From IMG/VR virus record IMGVR_UViG_3300037054_000148, positions 249,598-313,597 of that record: a stretch of 64,000 bases of DNA; one strand, 5' to 3'. The translations under genes and the position numbers were made by a program. How positions within the stretch are numbered: the stretch's first letter is position 1; each line of letters starts with the position of its first letter. The notes under the pieces were generated by a model. That model was not told the DNA's origin, ran no database searches, and saw nothing but the letters and a program-made list of their open reading frames with translations. Positions 4 through 9,957 of this stretch are shown piece after piece.

Positions 4-756
4 ATGCTCAAATTGCAACACGCTTTTGGGGCTGGTGGAGGGGAACTTCGAATTGCTTCTTGTAATGAAGTCTTACCTCATGGACCCCACATCTTCAAGA
101 ATGAAGTGATTGGTGGGGCCAAGTGGGACTGGTTCCAGATGGGTGGTCGGTGGACTGGCTTCTTCAAGCTGAAGGAAGCGGTCGCTCATATCGGTGGGGT
201 GCTGGGCACTCCTGGCCTGATGACTCCTGAAGCTGAAGCTGGACATGCGGATCAACTGATAGCCGGGGATGTGGATTTCGAAGGAATGCGAACCCAGGCT
301 GCGGTCAAGGCGTTCCAGCAGTATGAGGATGTGGCCCATGCGTTCGGCGGAGAGATCCCCAAGATCGAACGCCTCTGGAAAGAAGTGGTCGAGGACCAGA
401 CCATCGGTGATATCCAAGCCCGAAGGGACTTCTACCATGCTCAGCCTGCCCTGGTAAGGCTGAGCATGGTAGAAGTCCAGGATGCCAAGGCCATGCCGGA
501 GTCGGTGGATCGTTTCTTCTTCGATCTGGAAGAGTTCCAGTGCGACGAAGAAGCTTACGTCGAACGGGCCAAGAACTCTGCCTGTGTGCCCTTCGCCTTC
601 GTGAAAGAGGGGCAGTGGTATGAGAGGGGCCGGATGGGCTGGTGGGCCTGTGTGAGCAACGAGAAGGACCGTGACGAGTGGAACCGTCAGTTCAACAAGA
701 TGATGGACGAACTTCCGGCCAACACGCTCCTGACCCTGGTTGATTGCCACATCTGA
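4..756 (+). CDS. Phage hypothetical protein (probably 5'-truncated by window edge)
   Basis: 250-aa ORF with coding-like GC3 bias; AKWDWFQMGGRW and C-terminal LTLVDCHI motifs resemble a common phage hypothetical family. Confidence 0.75.
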   Translation: MLKLQHAFGAGGGELRIASCNEVLPHGPHIFKNEVIGGAKWDWFQMGGRWTGFFKLKEAVAHIGGVLGTPGLMTPEAEAGHADQLIAGDVDFEGMRTQAAVKAFQQYEDVAHAFGGEIPKIERLWKEVVEDQTIGDIQARRDFYHAQPALVRLSMVEVQDAKAMPESVDRFFFDLEEFQCDEEAYVERAKNSACVPFAFVKEGQWYERGRMGWWACVSNEKDRDEWNRQFNKMMDELPANTLLTLVDCHI

Positions 757-4661: not shown

Positions 4662-4873
4662 CCCGCAGAGAGGGTGCAAAGCTCATAATCGAGCAGACCG
4701 AGCCAACCACATGCTTCTACTGCCACAAAGTGGCTGAACTCAGGCCCTATGGCCCTCAAGGGCAGTCCATTTGTTTTGATTGTGGGATGCACAATCCAGA
4801 AGAAACAGAGCGGCAATTTCTCAAATTACTGGAGGGCTGTAATGGGTTTTCTGACCCGACTGTTCGGGAGTGA
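4658..4873 (+). CDS. Small CxxC...CxxC zinc-finger protein
   Basis: CFYC...CFDC; ATGA overlap. Confidence 0.65.
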   Translation: MTRREGAKLIIEQTEPTTCFYCHKVAELRPYGPQGQSICFDCGMHNPEETERQFLKLLEGCNGFSDPTVRE

Positions 4874-5910: not shown

Positions 5911-5942
5911 TATACCCAAACTGCCCTGACTTAGGGTATAAT
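5911..5942 (+). promoter_or_regulatory. Putative sigma70-type early promoter
   Basis: GGG-TATAAT at 5934-5942 with upstream ACCCAAA, like other early promoters here. Confidence 0.5.
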
Positions 5943-5959
5943 AAGATATGGGGGATCGC

Positions 5960-6340
5960 ATGACCGACTACAACGTCTACGAAACCGATGCACTGAAGGC
6001 CCTGCTGGATGGAAAGCAGGCGAAACGTAACGACCTGGACTACGAGATCAAGCAGATCAGCACGATCCTCAACACCCGTCTGGCTCAGACCTACCGGTTC
6101 ATCCGGTTCACGGCGATGAAGCAGGGGCAGTTGGACTGCATCAAGACGCTGCGTAACGCTTCCTGTGCCCCAGGCGGGTGCTACATGGGGCTGAAGGAGG
6201 CCAAAGAATTGACCGATCAGCTTAAGGGCCAGTTCATCCGCCCGTTCACCGTGGAGTTCAGGCACCTCAGCGATATGCCGGAGGTCATCCAGGCCCTGCA
6301 CGAATGCTTCGAGTGTGTGCCGGTTGAGGGCGGGGAGTAA
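5960..6340 (+). CDS. Protein with ribosomal L7/L12 C-terminal-like motif
   Basis: CIKTLR...MGLKEAKELTD resembles the L7/L12 CTD motif IK.VR..TGLGLKEAKDLVE. Confidence 0.6.
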   Translation: MTDYNVYETDALKALLDGKQAKRNDLDYEIKQISTILNTRLAQTYRFIRFTAMKQGQLDCIKTLRNASCAPGGCYMGLKEAKELTDQLKGQFIRPFTVEFRHLSDMPEVIQALHECFECVPVEGGE

Positions 6341-6720
6341 TGTCCAACCCTGTGTTCTGCTTCGGATCCAATCTGGCAGGAAGGCACGGGGCTGGAGCAG
6401 CCCTGTACGCTGTCCGAACCCAAGGGGCTGTGTGGGGCTGTGGAATCGGCCACCATGGGGATAGCTATGCGATTCCGACCAAGGGCTGTCATCTGGAAGT
6501 GTTGGGTCTGGAGGAGATTGGGGATTACATCACCAACTTCCTCTCTTATGCGGCTCGTCATCCAGAACTGACATTCAATGTCACCCGGATTGGATGTGGT
6601 CTCGCAGGCTATGCGGATGACCAGATGGCCCCGCTGTTCTCACCCGTGGAAAACTGTTTCTACCCTACCGAATGGAAACCTTGGCTGGGAGAGGCGGCTC
6701 ACTATCACGATCTTCACTAA
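6340..6720 (+). CDS. A1S_2505-family phage protein (macrodomain-like)
   Basis: VFCFGSNLAGRHGAGAA, SYAIPTK, VTRIGCGLAGY motifs. Confidence 0.8.
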   Translation: MSNPVFCFGSNLAGRHGAGAALYAVRTQGAVWGCGIGHHGDSYAIPTKGCHLEVLGLEEIGDYITNFLSYAARHPELTFNVTRIGCGLAGYADDQMAPLFSPVENCFYPTEWKPWLGEAAHYHDLH

Positions 6721-6730
6721 AGGCCATCTT

Positions 6731-6847
6731 ATGTTCCCAAAAATTGTAGTAATCTGTGGCAGCAGTAGATTTGTCGATGTAATGTCGGTGATTAGCTGGT
6801 GGATCGAGCGAGACGAGGAAAGAATCACATCTGGAATGTTTGACTAG
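6731..6847 (+). pseudogene. Short, probably truncated gene fragment
   Basis: MFPKIVVICGSSRF resembles the N-terminus of a common phage family (ICGS.RF) but stops after 38 aa. Confidence 0.35.
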
Positions 6848-6891
6848 CCAATTCAGCCCAATCCTGGGTATCATAGGGTAAGGAGACAAGA

Positions 6892-7092
6892 ATGCAACCA
6901 ATTCAAATCAACGATTCTCGTCTGGGGTTCAAGACCCCATCCATGAGTGAACTGCTCCCGCCATATGCGGAGATCCCGAAGGAATTCAAGGATTTCAACG
7001 GTCGCAACAAATGGCTTCAGACGACTACCGACTGGTTCTTCTGTGGCCTGAAGGGGGCTCAATTTGACCCCTCCTCTTTTCTGGCCATATAG
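6892..7092 (+). CDS. Hypothetical protein, possibly C-terminally truncated
   Basis: AAGGAG RBS; LLPPY.EIP.EF..WFF.GL motif. Confidence 0.55.
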   Translation: MQPIQINDSRLGFKTPSMSELLPPYAEIPKEFKDFNGRNKWLQTTTDWFFCGLKGAQFDPSSFLAI

Positions 7093-7311
7093 CCTTCGCT
7101 GTAGCCAATATTCCGTGCATACTGACCTATGCGATTTTGGATCGAGAGCGGCACCTTCTGGAGCACATTATCGAACTCCATCGTATTGGAGATCAGGTGC
7201 GAGAGCAGTTTGATAAGTTCATTAAGTGTGAGGAAAGGGCCAAACAGATGGAGGCGGAGGCCAGAAACACTCCGTTGGTCTTTGATTTCAAATCCAAAGA
7301 ATAGCGATAGC

Positions 7312-7367
7312 AAAATTTCAGGCATATGGAGCCCTTAAGTAGACGGAGCCCATATGCCTGAAATTTT
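7312..7367. repeat. Perfect 18-bp inverted repeat (20-bp spacer) covering the ATG of 7354
   Basis: AAAATTTCAGGCATATGG (7312-7329) / CCATATGCCTGAAATTTT (7350-7367). Confidence 0.95.
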
Positions 7368-7569
7368 TCAATTAACTCTGAACCTGACCACCGCAGGGAC
7401 CGATCAGGCTCTAGCCCCCCAGGATATCGCTACGGTGCTGCAAAATGCCGCCAATTTGCTTCTGCAATACGGGTATCAGAATAACATCTTAGTGTATCAG
7501 AATATGGGAATGGTGGGTGATTATAAATTCAAGCCCTCTCCACCTCAAGGTAGCTCAGCACTAAACTAA
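7354..7569 (+). CDS. Small putative virion protein (paralogue A)
   Basis: GGAG RBS; similar to 7600-7812; late-type promoter motif upstream. Confidence 0.65.
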   Translation: MPEIFQLTLNLTTAGTDQALAPQDIATVLQNAANLLLQYGYQNNILVYQNMGMVGDYKFKPSPPQGSSALN

Positions 7570-7599
7570 GCTACCAAATTCTCAGATAGGAGACCACTC

Positions 7600-7812
7600 A
7601 TGTATACCAATTTCCAATTAAATATTTCACTCACGAACGCTGCCGGTTCAGATCTAACCACCACACAGGTGGCTGCAATTCTGACTGCCGCCGCCTCTAC
7701 GGTCAGCACCAACCTCTATACGAATGAGCCATTGATCTATTCCGGCCAGTTAGTAGGCCATTACTGCTGGCAGCCCACTGGATCGGCTGGGACTCCTGGA
7801 AATGGGGATTAA
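7600..7812 (+). CDS. Small putative virion protein (paralogue B)
   Basis: AGGAG RBS; shares FQL...LT.A, L..AA, L.Y, VG.Y with 7354-7569. Confidence 0.65.
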   Translation: MYTNFQLNISLTNAAGSDLTTTQVAAILTAAASTVSTNLYTNEPLIYSGQLVGHYCWQPTGSAGTPGNGD

Positions 7813-7821
7813 GGCCGTCTA

Positions 7822-8262
7822 ATGCGACTCAACGCCAAGTTGCTGTGTAAAACAGCCGATGAAGACACAAAAGAAAAACTTATCGAAAAAGATAAAAATG
7901 AAGATTATGGAATGGAGGCCATTTTTGACTTGCATAATATCCGTAGCGAGCTTATAACAGTTGAGAGAATTAGAAGGTTTGCTTCTGACCTGTGTGATAA
8001 AATATCTATGGAAAAAGGACCAGCGTTTACATGGGGGACAGACTCTAATAAAGACGAAATGAAGAACCCTAAAGCTATGGGGATATCCCACTTGCAGTTT
8101 GTACATAGTTCCTCTATTACCATGCACTGTTTAGATAAAATAGGTAAAGTTTTTATAAATATTTTTAGTTGTAAATCTTTTGACGACAAAATTGCCCGAG
8201 ATTTTGTAATTAAAACTTGGGGTGGTGATATTGTCTCTGAACATGTGATCACCAGAAAATGA
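7822..8262 (+). CDS. speD: S-adenosylmethionine decarboxylase-like pyruvoyl proenzyme
   Basis: YGMEAIFDL, GIS..QF..SSSITMH, FINIFSCKSFD motifs of the AdoMetDC family. Confidence 0.75.
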   Translation: MRLNAKLLCKTADEDTKEKLIEKDKNEDYGMEAIFDLHNIRSELITVERIRRFASDLCDKISMEKGPAFTWGTDSNKDEMKNPKAMGISHLQFVHSSSITMHCLDKIGKVFINIFSCKSFDDKIARDFVIKTWGGDIVSEHVITRK

Positions 8263-8954
8263 GTAAAGACCTACCTCATCCCACTTCTGGTGTTTATAGA
8301 ATAACTAACATTATAGATGGAAAGTTTTATATTGGGTCTTCTCAGAGTATACGAGTTAGATGGAATAGGCATAAACTTTACTTGGGAAGGGGGATTCACC
8401 CCAACCGCTATTTACAGAATGCCTGGAATCTTTATGGGGGGAGTTCATTTGAATTCTGTGTTATTACTTATTGCGAAGTTTCTTTATTAAAAGACAAAGA
8501 ACAGGAACTTTTAGACAAATATTGGGATAACTGTGAAAGTTGTTATAATATATCAAAAGATGCCACATGTCCAATGCGTGGGAGGCATTTAACTGAAGAA
8601 CAACTATATAGAATGCCATTAAGGTTAAAAGGGAGAAAACAGAGTGAGGAATGGGTAGCAAATAGTGCAAAATCTCGTAATGGTTTGAAGCGGTCTGCGG
8701 CTTTTTGTGAAGCTAACTCATTACGTCAAAAGGGAATGAAGCGGCCTACAAACCATTGCAATAGTATATCTAAAGCAACAACGGGCGAGAAAAACCCTAA
8801 TGCAAAAGTTACAGAAGAAATTGTAACAAGTATAAGAACTGATTATAGATTGGGAATGACATATAATCAGTTAAAAAACAAATATGACACTACTTATACT
8901 ATTGCTAGAAATATCTGTTTAAATATAACCTGGAGGGGGTCTGCACATGAATAA
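8259..8954 (+). CDS. Free-standing GIY-YIG homing endonuclease with NUMOD3-like repeats
   Basis: SGVYRITNIIDGKFYIGSS..IR.RW..H, H.NRYLQNAW, GEKNPNAK; AT-rich. Confidence 0.9.
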   Translation: MSKDLPHPTSGVYRITNIIDGKFYIGSSQSIRVRWNRHKLYLGRGIHPNRYLQNAWNLYGGSSFEFCVITYCEVSLLKDKEQELLDKYWDNCESCYNISKDATCPMRGRHLTEEQLYRMPLRLKGRKQSEEWVANSAKSRNGLKRSAAFCEANSLRQKGMKRPTNHCNSISKATTGEKNPNAKVTEEIVTSIRTDYRLGMTYNQLKNKYDTTYTIARNICLNITWRGSAHE

Positions 8955-9957
8955 ACTAGTTGGTGCCGCTATTTTTCCAACTGGCATTGGACTGTCCATT
9001 GGAGGAGATGCTTCGGCTGGTGCAGTTATCCCATTACTTGCTTCTTGTTCGAAAAAGTTAATAGTCAATCCAAATGGAGTGAATGCGAGTGACTTAGTAG
9101 CCTGGGCTGACAACGTTCTCTATGTGGAAGGATCTACGATTGATCGCTTCCTTGAGGGCTCTATTAACCTTAAAGAATGCAGAACTTACAATAAGATTCT
9201 CTGTGTGGTAAATAAGCCGATGTCCATCGCATCTCAAAATGCTGTCAATGCGGCTCGTTGGACGTTGGGTGCGGATATCGAATTGCTGGAGCTTGACACT
9301 CCACTGCGGATGACAGCATTTATCAATCCAGACGGAACGGCTGGGGGTAAACTCTCTGGCCATCACGAGTTAGTTAAGCAGATTAAGGATGCAAATATTG
9401 ATTATGATATCCTTACGGTGCATACTCCAATTGACTGTCCGGATGAAATCGCCAATGCTTACTGGCGACAAGAGATTCTGGTCAATCCCTGGGGTCGAGT
9501 CGAAGCCTTATTAAGTAAATTTCTTTCCTTCGCACTAGACAAACAGGCTGTCCACTCTCCAGTGGAGTTCTTGGCTGACCCACTCTTTAACAGAATTGCG
9601 GTGAAACCGTCCGAGGCCGCTGAAGTAATTTCGAATACGTTTGCTTGGTGTATGTTCAAGGGAACCCACCGAGCCCCGATGATAGACCCGGATCGTAATC
9701 CTCGTAACCTATCCAATCAGGACATGGATTTTCTCATTTCTCCCTCAGACTGTTGGGGCCGACCCCATGATGCCTGCCTTCAGAACCACATTCCCATTCT
9801 AATCGTCAAAGAAAACACCACATGTTTCAAAGATTTCAAGTATCCGATGGTGGCTCTTGAAAGTTCCAGGGTAATCTTTGTTGAAAATTACCTTGAAGCG
9901 GCTGGGATGCTGATGGCTTGGAACGCTGGAATCGACCCACGGATCATCAGGGCTTGA
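8947..9957 (+). CDS. DUF3326-family protein
   Basis: PTGIGLSIGG, NPNGVNASD, YVEGSTIDRF, NPWGRVEALLS, AAE, VENYLEAAG motifs. Confidence 0.75.
   Translation: MNKLVGAAIFPTGIGLSIGGDASAGAVIPLLASCSKKLIVNPNGVNASDLVAWADNVLYVEGSTIDRFLEGSINLKECRTYNKILCVVNKPMSIASQNAVNAARWTLGADIELLELDTPLRMTAFINPDGTAGGKLSGHHELVKQIKDANIDYDILTVHTPIDCPDEIANAYWRQEILVNPWGRVEALLSKFLSFALDKQAVHSPVEFLADPLFNRIAVKPSEAAEVISNTFAWCMFKGTHRAPMIDPDRNPRNLSNQDMDFLISPSDCWGRPHDACLQNHIPILIVKENTTCFKDFKYPMVALESSRVIFVENYLEAAGMLMAWNAGIDPRIIRA

What the first reader, a model, noticed from the sequence alone, without database searches (positions are those of the whole stretch)
7312..7367. 18-bp perfect hairpin that buries a start codon unless transcription starts inside its loop
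Seen: arms 7312-7329 and 7350-7367; the right arm holds the ATG and first codons of 7354. The late motif (7322-7341) predicts a start near 7341, downstream of the left arm. Known: T4 genes e, soc and 49 use this logic, where early read-through RNA folds over the initiation site and a late promoter inside the hairpin frees it. Inference: a temporal translation switch for a late gene stranded among early genes.
Basis: partly seen in the sequence, partly recalled or inferred. Interest (0 to 1): 0.6.

Follow-up and report, generated by a model that had tools for sequence, protein, structure and literature searches.

The report
Conserved hairpin locking a start codon
A very stable RNA hairpin, conserved in related peat phages, buries the ribosome-binding site and start codon of a small gene of unknown function; this is a known kind of translational lock, and no promoter that would unlock it, as in phage T4, could be found.

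Summary
The hairpin is real: arms 7312-7329 and 7350-7367 pair perfectly over 18 bp, and the fold is far more stable than shuffled sequence (-36.6 kcal/mol, z -5.4). It is the second longest perfect hairpin in this 313.6-kb uncultured peat jumbo phage. The ATG of the 71-aa ORF 7354-7569 lies in the right arm. The Shine-Dalgarno GGAG (7345-7348) is also paired, by an inner stem.

Five further sequence variants from other metagenomes keep the same ~22-pair structure (-25 to -31 kcal/mol). Two pairs show compensatory changes, one of them at a synonymous codon position. The upstream genes differ between lineages, and homology begins at the left arm. The gene is under purifying selection (pN/pS 0.09-0.29), so it must be translated. 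Freeing its ribosome site costs about 27 kcal/mol on full-length RNA and about 6 on RNA starting at 7330 or later.

The translational lock is therefore well supported. The proposed key is not. None of the three recurrent promoter-like words (GAGTAWTA, TAGACA/TATACA-N17-18-GGTATAAT, CACATAAAA) occurs in the hairpin, the apical loop varies between lineages, and nothing marks the gene as late. The RNA contigs do not cover the site. This is a new member of a known kind, and how the lock is relieved is unresolved.

The parts
7312..7329 (+). Left (5') arm of the hairpin. It is non-coding and lies 7 nt after the stop (7302-7304) of the upstream ORF remnant.
   Evidence: Its outer 12-13 nt are almost invariant in six sequence variants, although the DNA upstream of it is unrelated between lineages.
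7330..7349 (+). The 20 nt between the arms. An inner stem pairs 7331-7334 with 7345-7349, leaving a 10-nt apical loop at 7335-7344.
   Evidence: MFE and centroid fold. The consensus structure pairs the SD in all six variants, using different left-side letters (CCC in the window, CUCU elsewhere). The apical loop varies between lineages.
7345..7348 (+). Shine-Dalgarno GGAG, 5 nt before the ATG. It is paired in the inner stem.
   Evidence: Sequence. Invariant in all variants and paired in the consensus fold.
7350..7367 (+). Right (3') arm. It holds the last 4 nt of the leader, the ATG (7354-7356) and codons 2-5.
   Evidence: Codons 1-6 are identical in lineages whose synonymous divergence is 0.36-0.75. 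In L022 a GAA>GAG change is matched by T>C in the left arm.
7364..7368 (+). Run of five T at the 3' base of the stem, mirrored by AAAA at 7312-7315. This is the feature that makes the hairpin look like a terminator.
   Evidence: Sequence. The 13 canonical intergenic terminator-like sites of this genome look different: GC-rich 6-13-bp stems and mostly 4-nt loops.
7354..7569 (+). The locked gene: a 71-aa ORFan with a predicted beta-alpha-beta-beta fold.
   Evidence: Coding score +42.7. pN/pS 0.09-0.29. No family or fold match.
7600..7812 (+). Tandem paralogue (70 aa, about 30-34% identity) with an ordinary, unstructured initiation region.
   Evidence: Upstream sequence.
7137..7304 (+). Upstream ORF. 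In this genome it is the 3' two-thirds of an 86-aa gene that is intact in relative L004, and it has no SD or ATG of its own here.
   Evidence: Coding score +15.6 for this frame, against -45.2 for the overlapping ORF 7129-7338. L004 ORFs and blastn comparison.
7062..7122 (.). 61 nt that are an exact inverted copy of the homologous stretch in L004. It marks a rearrangement breakpoint just upstream of the locus.
   Evidence: blastn of the window against L004; sequences.
5935..5942 (+). GGTATAAT, the nearest recognisable upstream promoter-like site on the + strand. It is the inferred source of read-through RNA that would carry the whole hairpin.
   Evidence: Motif census. All called genes from 5948 to 9957 are co-directional and closely spaced. 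No GAGTAWTA or GGTATAAT word lies between 5942 and 14405 on the + strand.

Best explanation
The element is a conserved cis-acting RNA hairpin of about 22 base pairs in the leader and first five codons of gene 7354. It acts as a translational lock. On any + strand transcript that includes the left arm, which means every transcript coming from the recognisable upstream promoters, both the Shine-Dalgarno sequence and the AUG are base-paired in a helix of about -30 kcal/mol, so 30S subunits cannot bind. Because the protein is under purifying selection, some condition must produce an RNA in which the right arm is free. How that happens is not resolved. A 5' end created downstream of 7329, by internal initiation or by processing, would be sufficient. 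So would a factor that melts the helix. Shown here: the structure, its conservation with compensatory changes, the energetics, selection on the gene, and the fact that the hairpin stays with the gene across different upstream contexts. Inferred: that it blocks translation, from established rules relating initiation-region stability to translation; and that the RNA comes from upstream promoters.
For: The structure is far beyond chance. Opening the ribosome site (-16..+12) costs 27.0 kcal/mol. That is 3.7 sd above the genome mean (10.9 +/- 4.3) and among the four highest of about 360 called ORFs. The -55..+25 MFE is the third lowest of 363 and the lowest for a start that I take to be real. Six distinct sequence variants from different metagenomes all fold the same way (-25 to -31 kcal/mol). 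There are 22 consensus pairs, 92% of cells are paired against 20-55% when partners are slid, and two pairs changed on both sides. One of these pairs a synonymous GAA>GAG change with T>C in the non-coding arm. The SD is paired in every variant by different left-side letters. The upstream genes differ between lineages and homology begins at the left arm. The non-coding arm is better conserved than synonymous sites of the gene (pS 0.36-0.9). pN/pS of 0.09-0.29 shows the gene is expressed as protein. No copy of either arm exists elsewhere in the genome and no Rfam family matches.
Against: There is no transcript or translation data. The four metatranscriptome runs, held as contigs only, have no contig over 7123-7545. 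Covariation support is thin: six sequences, two compensatory pairs, and 31 of 500 shuffles reach the observed score. Plus- and minus-strand folding energies are similar, so RNA strand specificity rests on gene orientation, not on G.U pairs. The relief mechanism is unknown, so the explanation is incomplete. The same hairpin also has an A-tract/U-tract frame and could act in termination.
Confidence: 0.62

Rival explanations
1. A promoter lies inside the hairpin, with its elements in the left arm or loop and its start site near 7341-7350. It makes a short RNA that lacks the left arm and is translated, while earlier read-through RNA is silent. This is a special case of the lock above, with the relief mechanism specified.
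For: An RNA beginning at 7330-7350 would have an open initiation region (5-7 kcal/mol). T4 e, soc, 49 and I-TevI work this way (PMC3014915). The same genome has one clear example at 4748-4785 on the minus strand: the left arm is the 18-nt spacer of a TAGACA-18-TATAAT promoter, the -10 box is in the loop and the SD is in the right arm. This phage has compact 8-bp promoter words (GAGTAWTA), some only 13-14 nt from the ATG, so very short leaders seem to be used. It is the simplest way to free the right arm.
Against: The cited 20-mer is unique, and near matches occur at chance rate. The best loop match to GAGTAWTA has 4 mismatches in 8. There is no sigma-70-like site and no CACATAAAA. Left-arm words are not enriched before genes. 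The apical loop and adjoining bases differ at about 7 of 20 positions between lineages while the pairing is kept, unlike the conserved TATAAATA of T4 relatives. No phage RNA polymerase or sigma factor was detectable. Nothing shows the gene to be late.
Confidence: 0.2
2. An intrinsic (Rho-independent) terminator or attenuator that ends the upstream transcription unit at about 7368-7372. The overlap with the start of 7354 is incidental or a second use. Downstream genes would then depend on read-through.
For: The layout is AAAA, a 14-bp core stem, then TTTTT followed by CAATT, like a bidirectional terminator. With the inner stem the apical loop is 10 nt. The A and T runs are kept in all lineages. 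The hairpin follows a stop codon by 1-10 nt in all lineages.
Against: The 13 canonical intergenic terminators of this genome have GC-rich 6-13-bp stems and mostly 4-nt loops. This one has three A-U pairs next to the U run and a long composite stem. The consensus terminator scan does not list it. No recognisable promoter follows it for about 7 kb of co-directional genes and tRNAs, so an efficient stop here would silence them. A terminator does not need the conserved pairing of the SD by varying sequences. The T run is also constrained by the Ile-Phe codons.
Confidence: 0.2
3. An RNase III (double-strand-specific) processing site. The roughly 22-bp helix is cut, which either activates the gene by removing the left arm or inactivates it by cutting off the AUG, and it separates the upstream and downstream mRNAs.
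For: The helix is about two turns long, and in several lineages it has a symmetric internal loop at the AUG. From general knowledge of the lambda N leader and the T7 R sites, this is the substrate type. It lies between cistrons of a polycistronic array.
Against: There is no direct evidence. A cut in the stem near the AUG would destroy the message rather than free it. The host and its RNase III specificity are unknown.
Confidence: 0.12
4. Relief by a trans-acting factor, or by ribosomes translating the upstream gene. The factor version resembles Com acting on the Mu mom leader. The ribosome version is translational coupling.
For: Because the gene is under selection, some opener is needed. Another hairpin in this genome (196221-196271) shows classic coupling: the left arm lies inside the upstream ORF and the stop and start overlap as ATGA.
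Against: For coupling: the upstream stop lies 1-10 nt before the left arm in every lineage, never inside it. A terminating ribosome would therefore open at most the first few pairs; this is an inference from the known ribosome footprint. In this genome the upstream ORF is a truncated remnant without a start. The only ORF that reads through the arm (7129-7338) scores as non-coding. For a factor: nothing is testable here.
Confidence: 0.1
5. A DNA-level palindrome with no RNA role: a protein-binding site, a recombination or mosaic-junction site, or a by-product of template-switch repair that made an imperfect palindrome perfect.
For: The locus is rearranged in this genome: a 61-nt exact inversion at 7062-7122 and gene gain and loss. 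Homology between lineages starts at the left arm. Folding energies are similar on both strands. The window lineage has the only perfect version.
Against: The breakpoints lie at 6761/7062/7122, not at the hairpin. The pairing persists, with compensatory changes and with mismatches and bulges at different places, in lineages with pS up to 0.9, which argues for selection on pairing rather than a recent accident. The arms are 20 bp apart, which is unlike typical operators. No second copy exists in the genome.
Confidence: 0.06

Closest known systems
Inhibitory initiation-region hairpins of phage T4 genes e, soc, 49 and I-TevI, bypassed by late promoters (review PMC3014915)
   Same: A stable helix sequesters the SD and/or the AUG on transcripts that come from upstream. 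The 5' strand of the helix lies in the non-coding leader just after the preceding gene. An RNA that starts inside the structure would be translatable.
   Different: No promoter could be identified in or beside the 5' arm. In T4 and its relatives a conserved TATAAATA sits there and the 5' ends have been mapped. Here the loop varies. The helix is much longer (about 22 bp, -30 kcal/mol). The gene has no known late function. The phage is unrelated to T4 and lacks a detectable late-sigma system.
The hairpin at genome 4748-4785 (minus strand) of this same phage
   Same: A perfect 16-bp stem that follows an upstream stop codon and buries the SD of the next gene. Its opening energy is 24 kcal/mol.
   Different: That one contains an obvious TAGACA-18-TATAAT promoter whose spacer is the left arm. 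The hairpin studied here has nothing comparable.
Intrinsic bidirectional terminators (A-tract, stem, U-tract)
   Same: A4 and U5 runs flank a long stem, placed just after a stop codon.
   Different: The stem base is AU-rich, the composite stem is long, the loop is 10-20 nt, and it overlaps the next gene's start. It is unlike the canonical terminators of this genome.
RNase III-processed leader hairpins (lambda N leader, T7 intercistronic R sites) and the Com-activated mom leader of phage Mu (from general knowledge, not tested here)
   Same: A long intercistronic helix that occludes an initiation region and needs a trans-acting activity to be relieved.
   Different: No cleavage or binding data exist here, and there are no sequence determinants to compare.

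Membership tests
T4-type late-promoter-bypassed translational hairpin (e, soc, 49, I-TevI) | An RNA helix sequesters the SD and/or the AUG of the gene | tested here: met
   The AUG lies in the 18-bp stem and the SD in the inner stem. Opening energy is 27 kcal/mol against a genome mean of 10.9.
T4-type late-promoter-bypassed translational hairpin (e, soc, 49, I-TevI) | A promoter in or next to the DNA encoding the 5' strand, so that its transcripts lack that strand | tested here: inconclusive
No match to any recurrent promoter-like word of this genome, and none from the sigma-70 scan. The late promoter of this phage is not known independently, so absence cannot be proven.
T4-type late-promoter-bypassed translational hairpin (e, soc, 49, I-TevI) | Longer transcripts from upstream (earlier) promoters run through the structure | not testable with these tools
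   This is inferred only, from co-directional packed genes and the nearest promoter-like site at 5935. RNA contigs do not cover 7123-7545.
T4-type late-promoter-bypassed translational hairpin (e, soc, 49, I-TevI) | The product is needed late, or is harmful early | tested here: inconclusive
   The gene is an ORFan with no family, sequence or fold relative of known function.
Intrinsic (Rho-independent) terminator | A GC-rich stem with a short loop, immediately followed by a U run | tested here: inconclusive
   The U5 run is present. However, the stem base is A-U, the loop is 10-20 nt, the site is not listed by the consensus scan, and it is unlike the 13 canonical sites of the genome.
Intrinsic (Rho-independent) terminator | Lies at the end of a transcription unit | tested here: not met
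   Co-directional genes and four tRNAs follow for about 7 kb with no recognisable promoter word. The hairpin overlaps the next gene's first five codons.
RNase III processing site | About two turns of near-perfect double-stranded RNA | tested here: met
   18 perfect pairs plus 4 inner pairs; 22 consensus pairs.
RNase III processing site | Cleavage by RNase III | not testable with these tools
   Needs an enzyme assay or mapping of processed ends.
Translational coupling hairpin | The 5' arm lies inside the upstream reading frame, so that ribosomes melt it | tested here: not met
   The upstream stop is 1-10 nt before the arm in all lineages. The frame that reads through the arm scores as non-coding.

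The most novel reading that the evidence does not exclude
The lock is opened neither by a T4-like internal promoter nor by upstream ribosomes. Instead it is opened by something not yet described for this kind of phage. Examples would be a phage-encoded RNA-binding or unwinding activator that acts on a 22-bp helix, or a non-canonical late promoter with no recognisable word that yields a nearly leaderless mRNA starting at about 7350. The hairpin would then also serve as the portable 5' boundary of a gene cassette that moves between phage genomes together with its own translational control.
Probability: 0.2. Interest if true: 0.55.

Novelty: new member of a known kind. Interest (0 to 1): 0.38.

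Why it matters
Regulation in uncultured jumbo phages is almost unknown. This is a clean, conserved example of post-transcriptional control that can be tested with simple reporters, in a peat phage lineage whose only cultured relative found here infects Acidobacteriota. It shows that the T4 idea of locking an initiation region in RNA structure recurs far from T4, and that the structure stays with the gene through mosaic recombination. With the promoter-bearing hairpin at genome 4748-4785 and the promoter-word census, it gives a first sketch of how this phage organises expression. It does not open a new class of mechanism unless the relief mechanism turns out to be unusual.

Tried and rejected
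The 20-mer and two overlapping windows were searched in the window and the whole genome with up to 6-7 mismatches. Only chance-level matches were found.
- **T4-type late words.** TATAAATA and CTAAATA are not enriched before genes.
- **A loop-derived word.** CCTTA-N1-2-TAG(A) looked promising: three sites just before starts, all in this window. It is best read as part of the TAAGGAG-type ribosome-site context, and with so few sites, picked after the fact, it is not a promoter.
- **Motif discovery by EM.** My run on upstream regions drifted to the Shine-Dalgarno motif and was abandoned in favour of word-enrichment tables.
- **Near-identical relatives.** L003, L004 and L013 gave no information on covariation.
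- **Phage record search.** The megablast search found nothing.
- **Metatranscriptomes.** The runs are held as contigs only, and none covers the hairpin.
- **Function of the 71-aa protein.** Pfam, PHROGs, the word-index search, the exhaustive profile search, the ESM Atlas, an AlphaFold model (pLDDT 70.6) and Foldseek against viral and PDB libraries gave nothing usable. The repeat match to the 1272-aa P0006 is weak and was not pursued.
- **Mini-ORF starting at ATG 7325 in the left arm.** It is not conserved in L014 or L022 (by reading the sequences).
- **ORF 7129-7338 reading through the arm.** It scores as non-coding.
- **Minus-strand ORF 7059-7325.** It is an artefact of the palindrome and of the inverted remnant.
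- **A 14-nt match of the loop at genome 188084.** It lies inside a DNA-ligase-like coding sequence and is taken as chance.
- **Strand assignment from G.U pairs.** This was not decisive.

Full report
**Source.** The window is the last 64 kb of a 313,597-bp IMG/VR virus record, G000:C1:249598-313597. Near-identical DNA is held by many peat and some freshwater metagenomes. The phage collection has no close relative. A baseplate protein in the window is 39% identical to one of Tunturiibacter phage Tunturi_5, a 309-kb phage of an acidobacterial host. The window carries small accessory genes and four tRNAs in its first 20 kb and very large structural genes from 22 to 60 kb.

**The observation.** The inverted repeat is as described: arms 7312-7329 and 7350-7367, 18 nt, perfectly complementary. 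It extends to 23 nt at 91%.
- As RNA, 7290-7400 folds at -36.6 kcal/mol. The shuffle mean is -18.7, z is -5.4, and none of 200 shuffles folds as well.
- The genome has 13 perfect hairpins with a stem of at least 12 and a loop of at most 40, against 1-3 in shuffled genomes whose longest stem is 13. This one is the second longest.
- The ATG of ORF 7354-7569 lies in the right arm. It is the true start, because the tandem paralogue 7600-7812 and all homologues align from residue 1.
In the fold, 7331-7334 pair with 7345-7349, so the Shine-Dalgarno GGAG (7345-7348) is also sequestered and the apical loop is only 10 nt.

**Energetics.** Making the ribosome site (-16..+12) single-stranded costs 26-27 kcal/mol on RNAs that start at or before 7312. 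It costs 16 from 7320 and 5-7 from 7330 onward. The mean over about 360 called ORFs is 10.9 +/- 4.3, and this start is among the four highest. In the -55..+25 MFE ranking it is third of 363. The two below it are opposite-strand ORFs, one of them the mirror image of this same palindrome. A full-length transcript should therefore be essentially untranslatable for this gene, and a transcript lacking the left arm should be normal.

**Conservation.** The 71-aa protein has no relatives of known function, but homologues exist in other metagenome contigs. Together with the window they give six distinct versions of the leader: window/L004/L013, L007-L012, L014/L019/L020, L015, L021 and L022/L023.
- All six fold into the same hairpin, at -25 to -31 kcal/mol.
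- RNAalifold predicts 22 pairs. 92% of cells are paired, against 20-55% when the partners are slid. Two pairs changed on both sides.
- In L022 the synonymous change GAA>GAG in codon 3 is matched by T>C in the non-coding arm.
- The SD is paired in every version, by CCC in the window and by CUCU elsewhere.
- With six sequences the statistics are modest: 31 of 500 shuffles reach the observed covariation score.
- The context adds weight. The upstream gene is different in different lineages and homology begins at the left arm. The non-coding arm is nearly invariant, while synonymous sites of the gene have diverged by 0.36-0.9.
- The gene itself is under purifying selection, with pN/pS of 0.09-0.29. 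It must therefore be translated under some condition.

**The local rearrangement.** Relative to L004, the window has gained 6762-7061, which carries a phrog_36680 gene. It carries 7062-7122 as an exact inverted copy, and it has lost the 5' third of an 86-aa gene. The ORF 7137-7304 is therefore a remnant without its own start. The alternative ORFs over the arm are not credible. ORF 7129-7338 (+) scores as non-coding, and ORF 7059-7325 (-) is a by-product of the palindrome and the inverted remnant. The hairpin is unchanged by all this and stays with gene 7354.

**The proposed promoter.** I derived this genome's recurrent promoter-like words from upstream regions.
- GAGTAWTA occurs 63 times, typically 13-26 nt before an ATG, with no -35 partner. 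Six sites lie at 13-14 nt.
- A sigma-70-like TAGACA/TATACA-N17-18-GGTATAAT is also recurrent.
- CACATAAAA lies about 53 nt before the first gene of each of the two large structural blocks.

None of these occurs in the hairpin. The best loop match to GAGTAWTA has four mismatches in eight, and the consensus scan finds no sigma-70 site there. Words from the left arm are not enriched before genes. Between lineages, the stretch that should hold such a promoter changes at many positions while the pairing is kept. In T4 relatives, by contrast, the late promoter in the 5' strand is conserved (PMC3014915). No phage RNA polymerase or sigma factor was detected with Pfam models. The four metatranscriptome runs are contigs only and leave 7123-7545 uncovered, which proves nothing either way. 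The internal start site therefore remains a hypothesis without positive evidence.

Two things keep it alive. It is the simplest way to free the right arm. And the same phage uses exactly this design elsewhere. At genome 4748-4785 (minus strand), a 16-bp perfect hairpin has its left arm as the spacer of a TAGACA-18-TATAAT promoter, the -10 box in the loop and the SD in the right arm.

**Rivals.**
- *Terminator.* The AAAA-stem-TTTTT frame resembles a bidirectional terminator. It is unlike the 13 canonical terminators of this genome, and it is not at the end of a unit: about 7 kb of co-directional genes follow without a recognisable promoter. A terminator role also does not explain the conserved pairing of the SD.
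- *Translational coupling.* This is disfavoured because the upstream stop always lies before the arm. Another hairpin at genome 196221 shows what real coupling looks like here.
- *RNase III processing or a trans-acting opener.* Both are compatible with the anatomy but cannot be tested here.
- *A purely DNA-level palindrome.* This is unlikely given that the pairing persists with compensation across deep synonymous divergence. However, strand energies do not discriminate between RNA and DNA readings.

**The gene.** It has no Pfam or PHROG family, only close homologues plus the paralogue, and no informative Atlas or fold match. The model has pLDDT 70.6 and a beta-alpha-beta-beta fold. Its neighbours in all lineages are small accessory genes, with an AdoMet decarboxylase and a DUF3326 protein downstream. 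Nothing supports calling it a late gene stranded among early genes.

**Verdict.** The structure and its role as a lock on the initiation region are well supported by sequence, energetics and comparison. The T4-like relief mechanism, a promoter in the loop, is neither shown nor excluded and has lost its only cited support. I file this as a new member of a known kind, translation-blocking leader hairpins of phages, with moderate interest.

Noticed in passing
genome 4748-4785, minus strand (outside the window; locus L025:549-586): A 16-bp perfect hairpin whose left arm is the 18-nt spacer of a TAGACA-18-TATAAT promoter. The -10 box is in the loop, the SD is in the right arm and the ATG follows 5 nt later. 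An upstream minus-strand ORF stops just before the -35. The gene has a weak receiver-domain match (PF20274, E 3e-4, below the cut-off). This is a clear promoter-inside-hairpin design.
   Followed up: partly
window 426-478: The longest perfect hairpin of the genome (22-bp stem, 9-nt loop) lies inside a 501-aa ORF that has no Pfam match. Its purpose is unknown.
   Followed up: no
window 6762-7122, compared with L004:2475-2768: A mosaic rearrangement. A 300-bp segment carrying a phrog_36680 gene is present here and absent in L004. 61 nt (7062-7122) are an exact inverted copy of L004 2632-2692. The 86-aa gene of L004 is truncated to 7137-7304. One RNA-library contig (X15) shows the L004-type junctions.
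   Followed up: yes
window 8259-8954: A GIY-YIG homing-endonuclease gene in a low-GC stretch (0.41) sits between the AdoMet decarboxylase and DUF3326 genes. Those two genes are adjacent in the contig that carries P0008, so this looks like a recent insertion.
   Followed up: partly
whole genome; in the window at 1100, 4341, 5051, 14405, 19660, 57443 (GAGTAWTA), 5935, 18936 (GGTATAAT) and 22058 (CACATAAAA): Three recurrent promoter-like words. GAGTAWTA has no -35 partner and lies 13-26 nt before the ATG; six sites at 13-14 nt suggest leaderless mRNAs. TAGACA/TATACA-N17-18-GGTATAAT is sigma-70-like. CACATAAAA lies about 53 nt before both large structural operons. Their timing classes are unknown.
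   Followed up: partly
genome 128.2, 199.5, 243.4-244.1 and 245.4 kb (outside the window): The palindromic word GGCCGGTGCC(GA) recurs beside several GAGTAWTA sites and forms two of the long hairpins (243432 and 244077). It may be a regulator-binding site.
   Followed up: no
genome 196221-196271 (outside the window): A 13-bp hairpin with its left arm inside the upstream ORF, the SD and ATG in the loop, and an ATGA stop/start overlap. This is the classic layout for translational coupling.
   Followed up: no
window 7520-7530: A TATAAAT word lies inside the 3' part of gene 7354, about 70 nt before the paralogue's start. RNA-library contigs begin at 7546 and 7559. The word is not conserved at synonymous sites in L004, so it is probably not a promoter.
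   Followed up: partly
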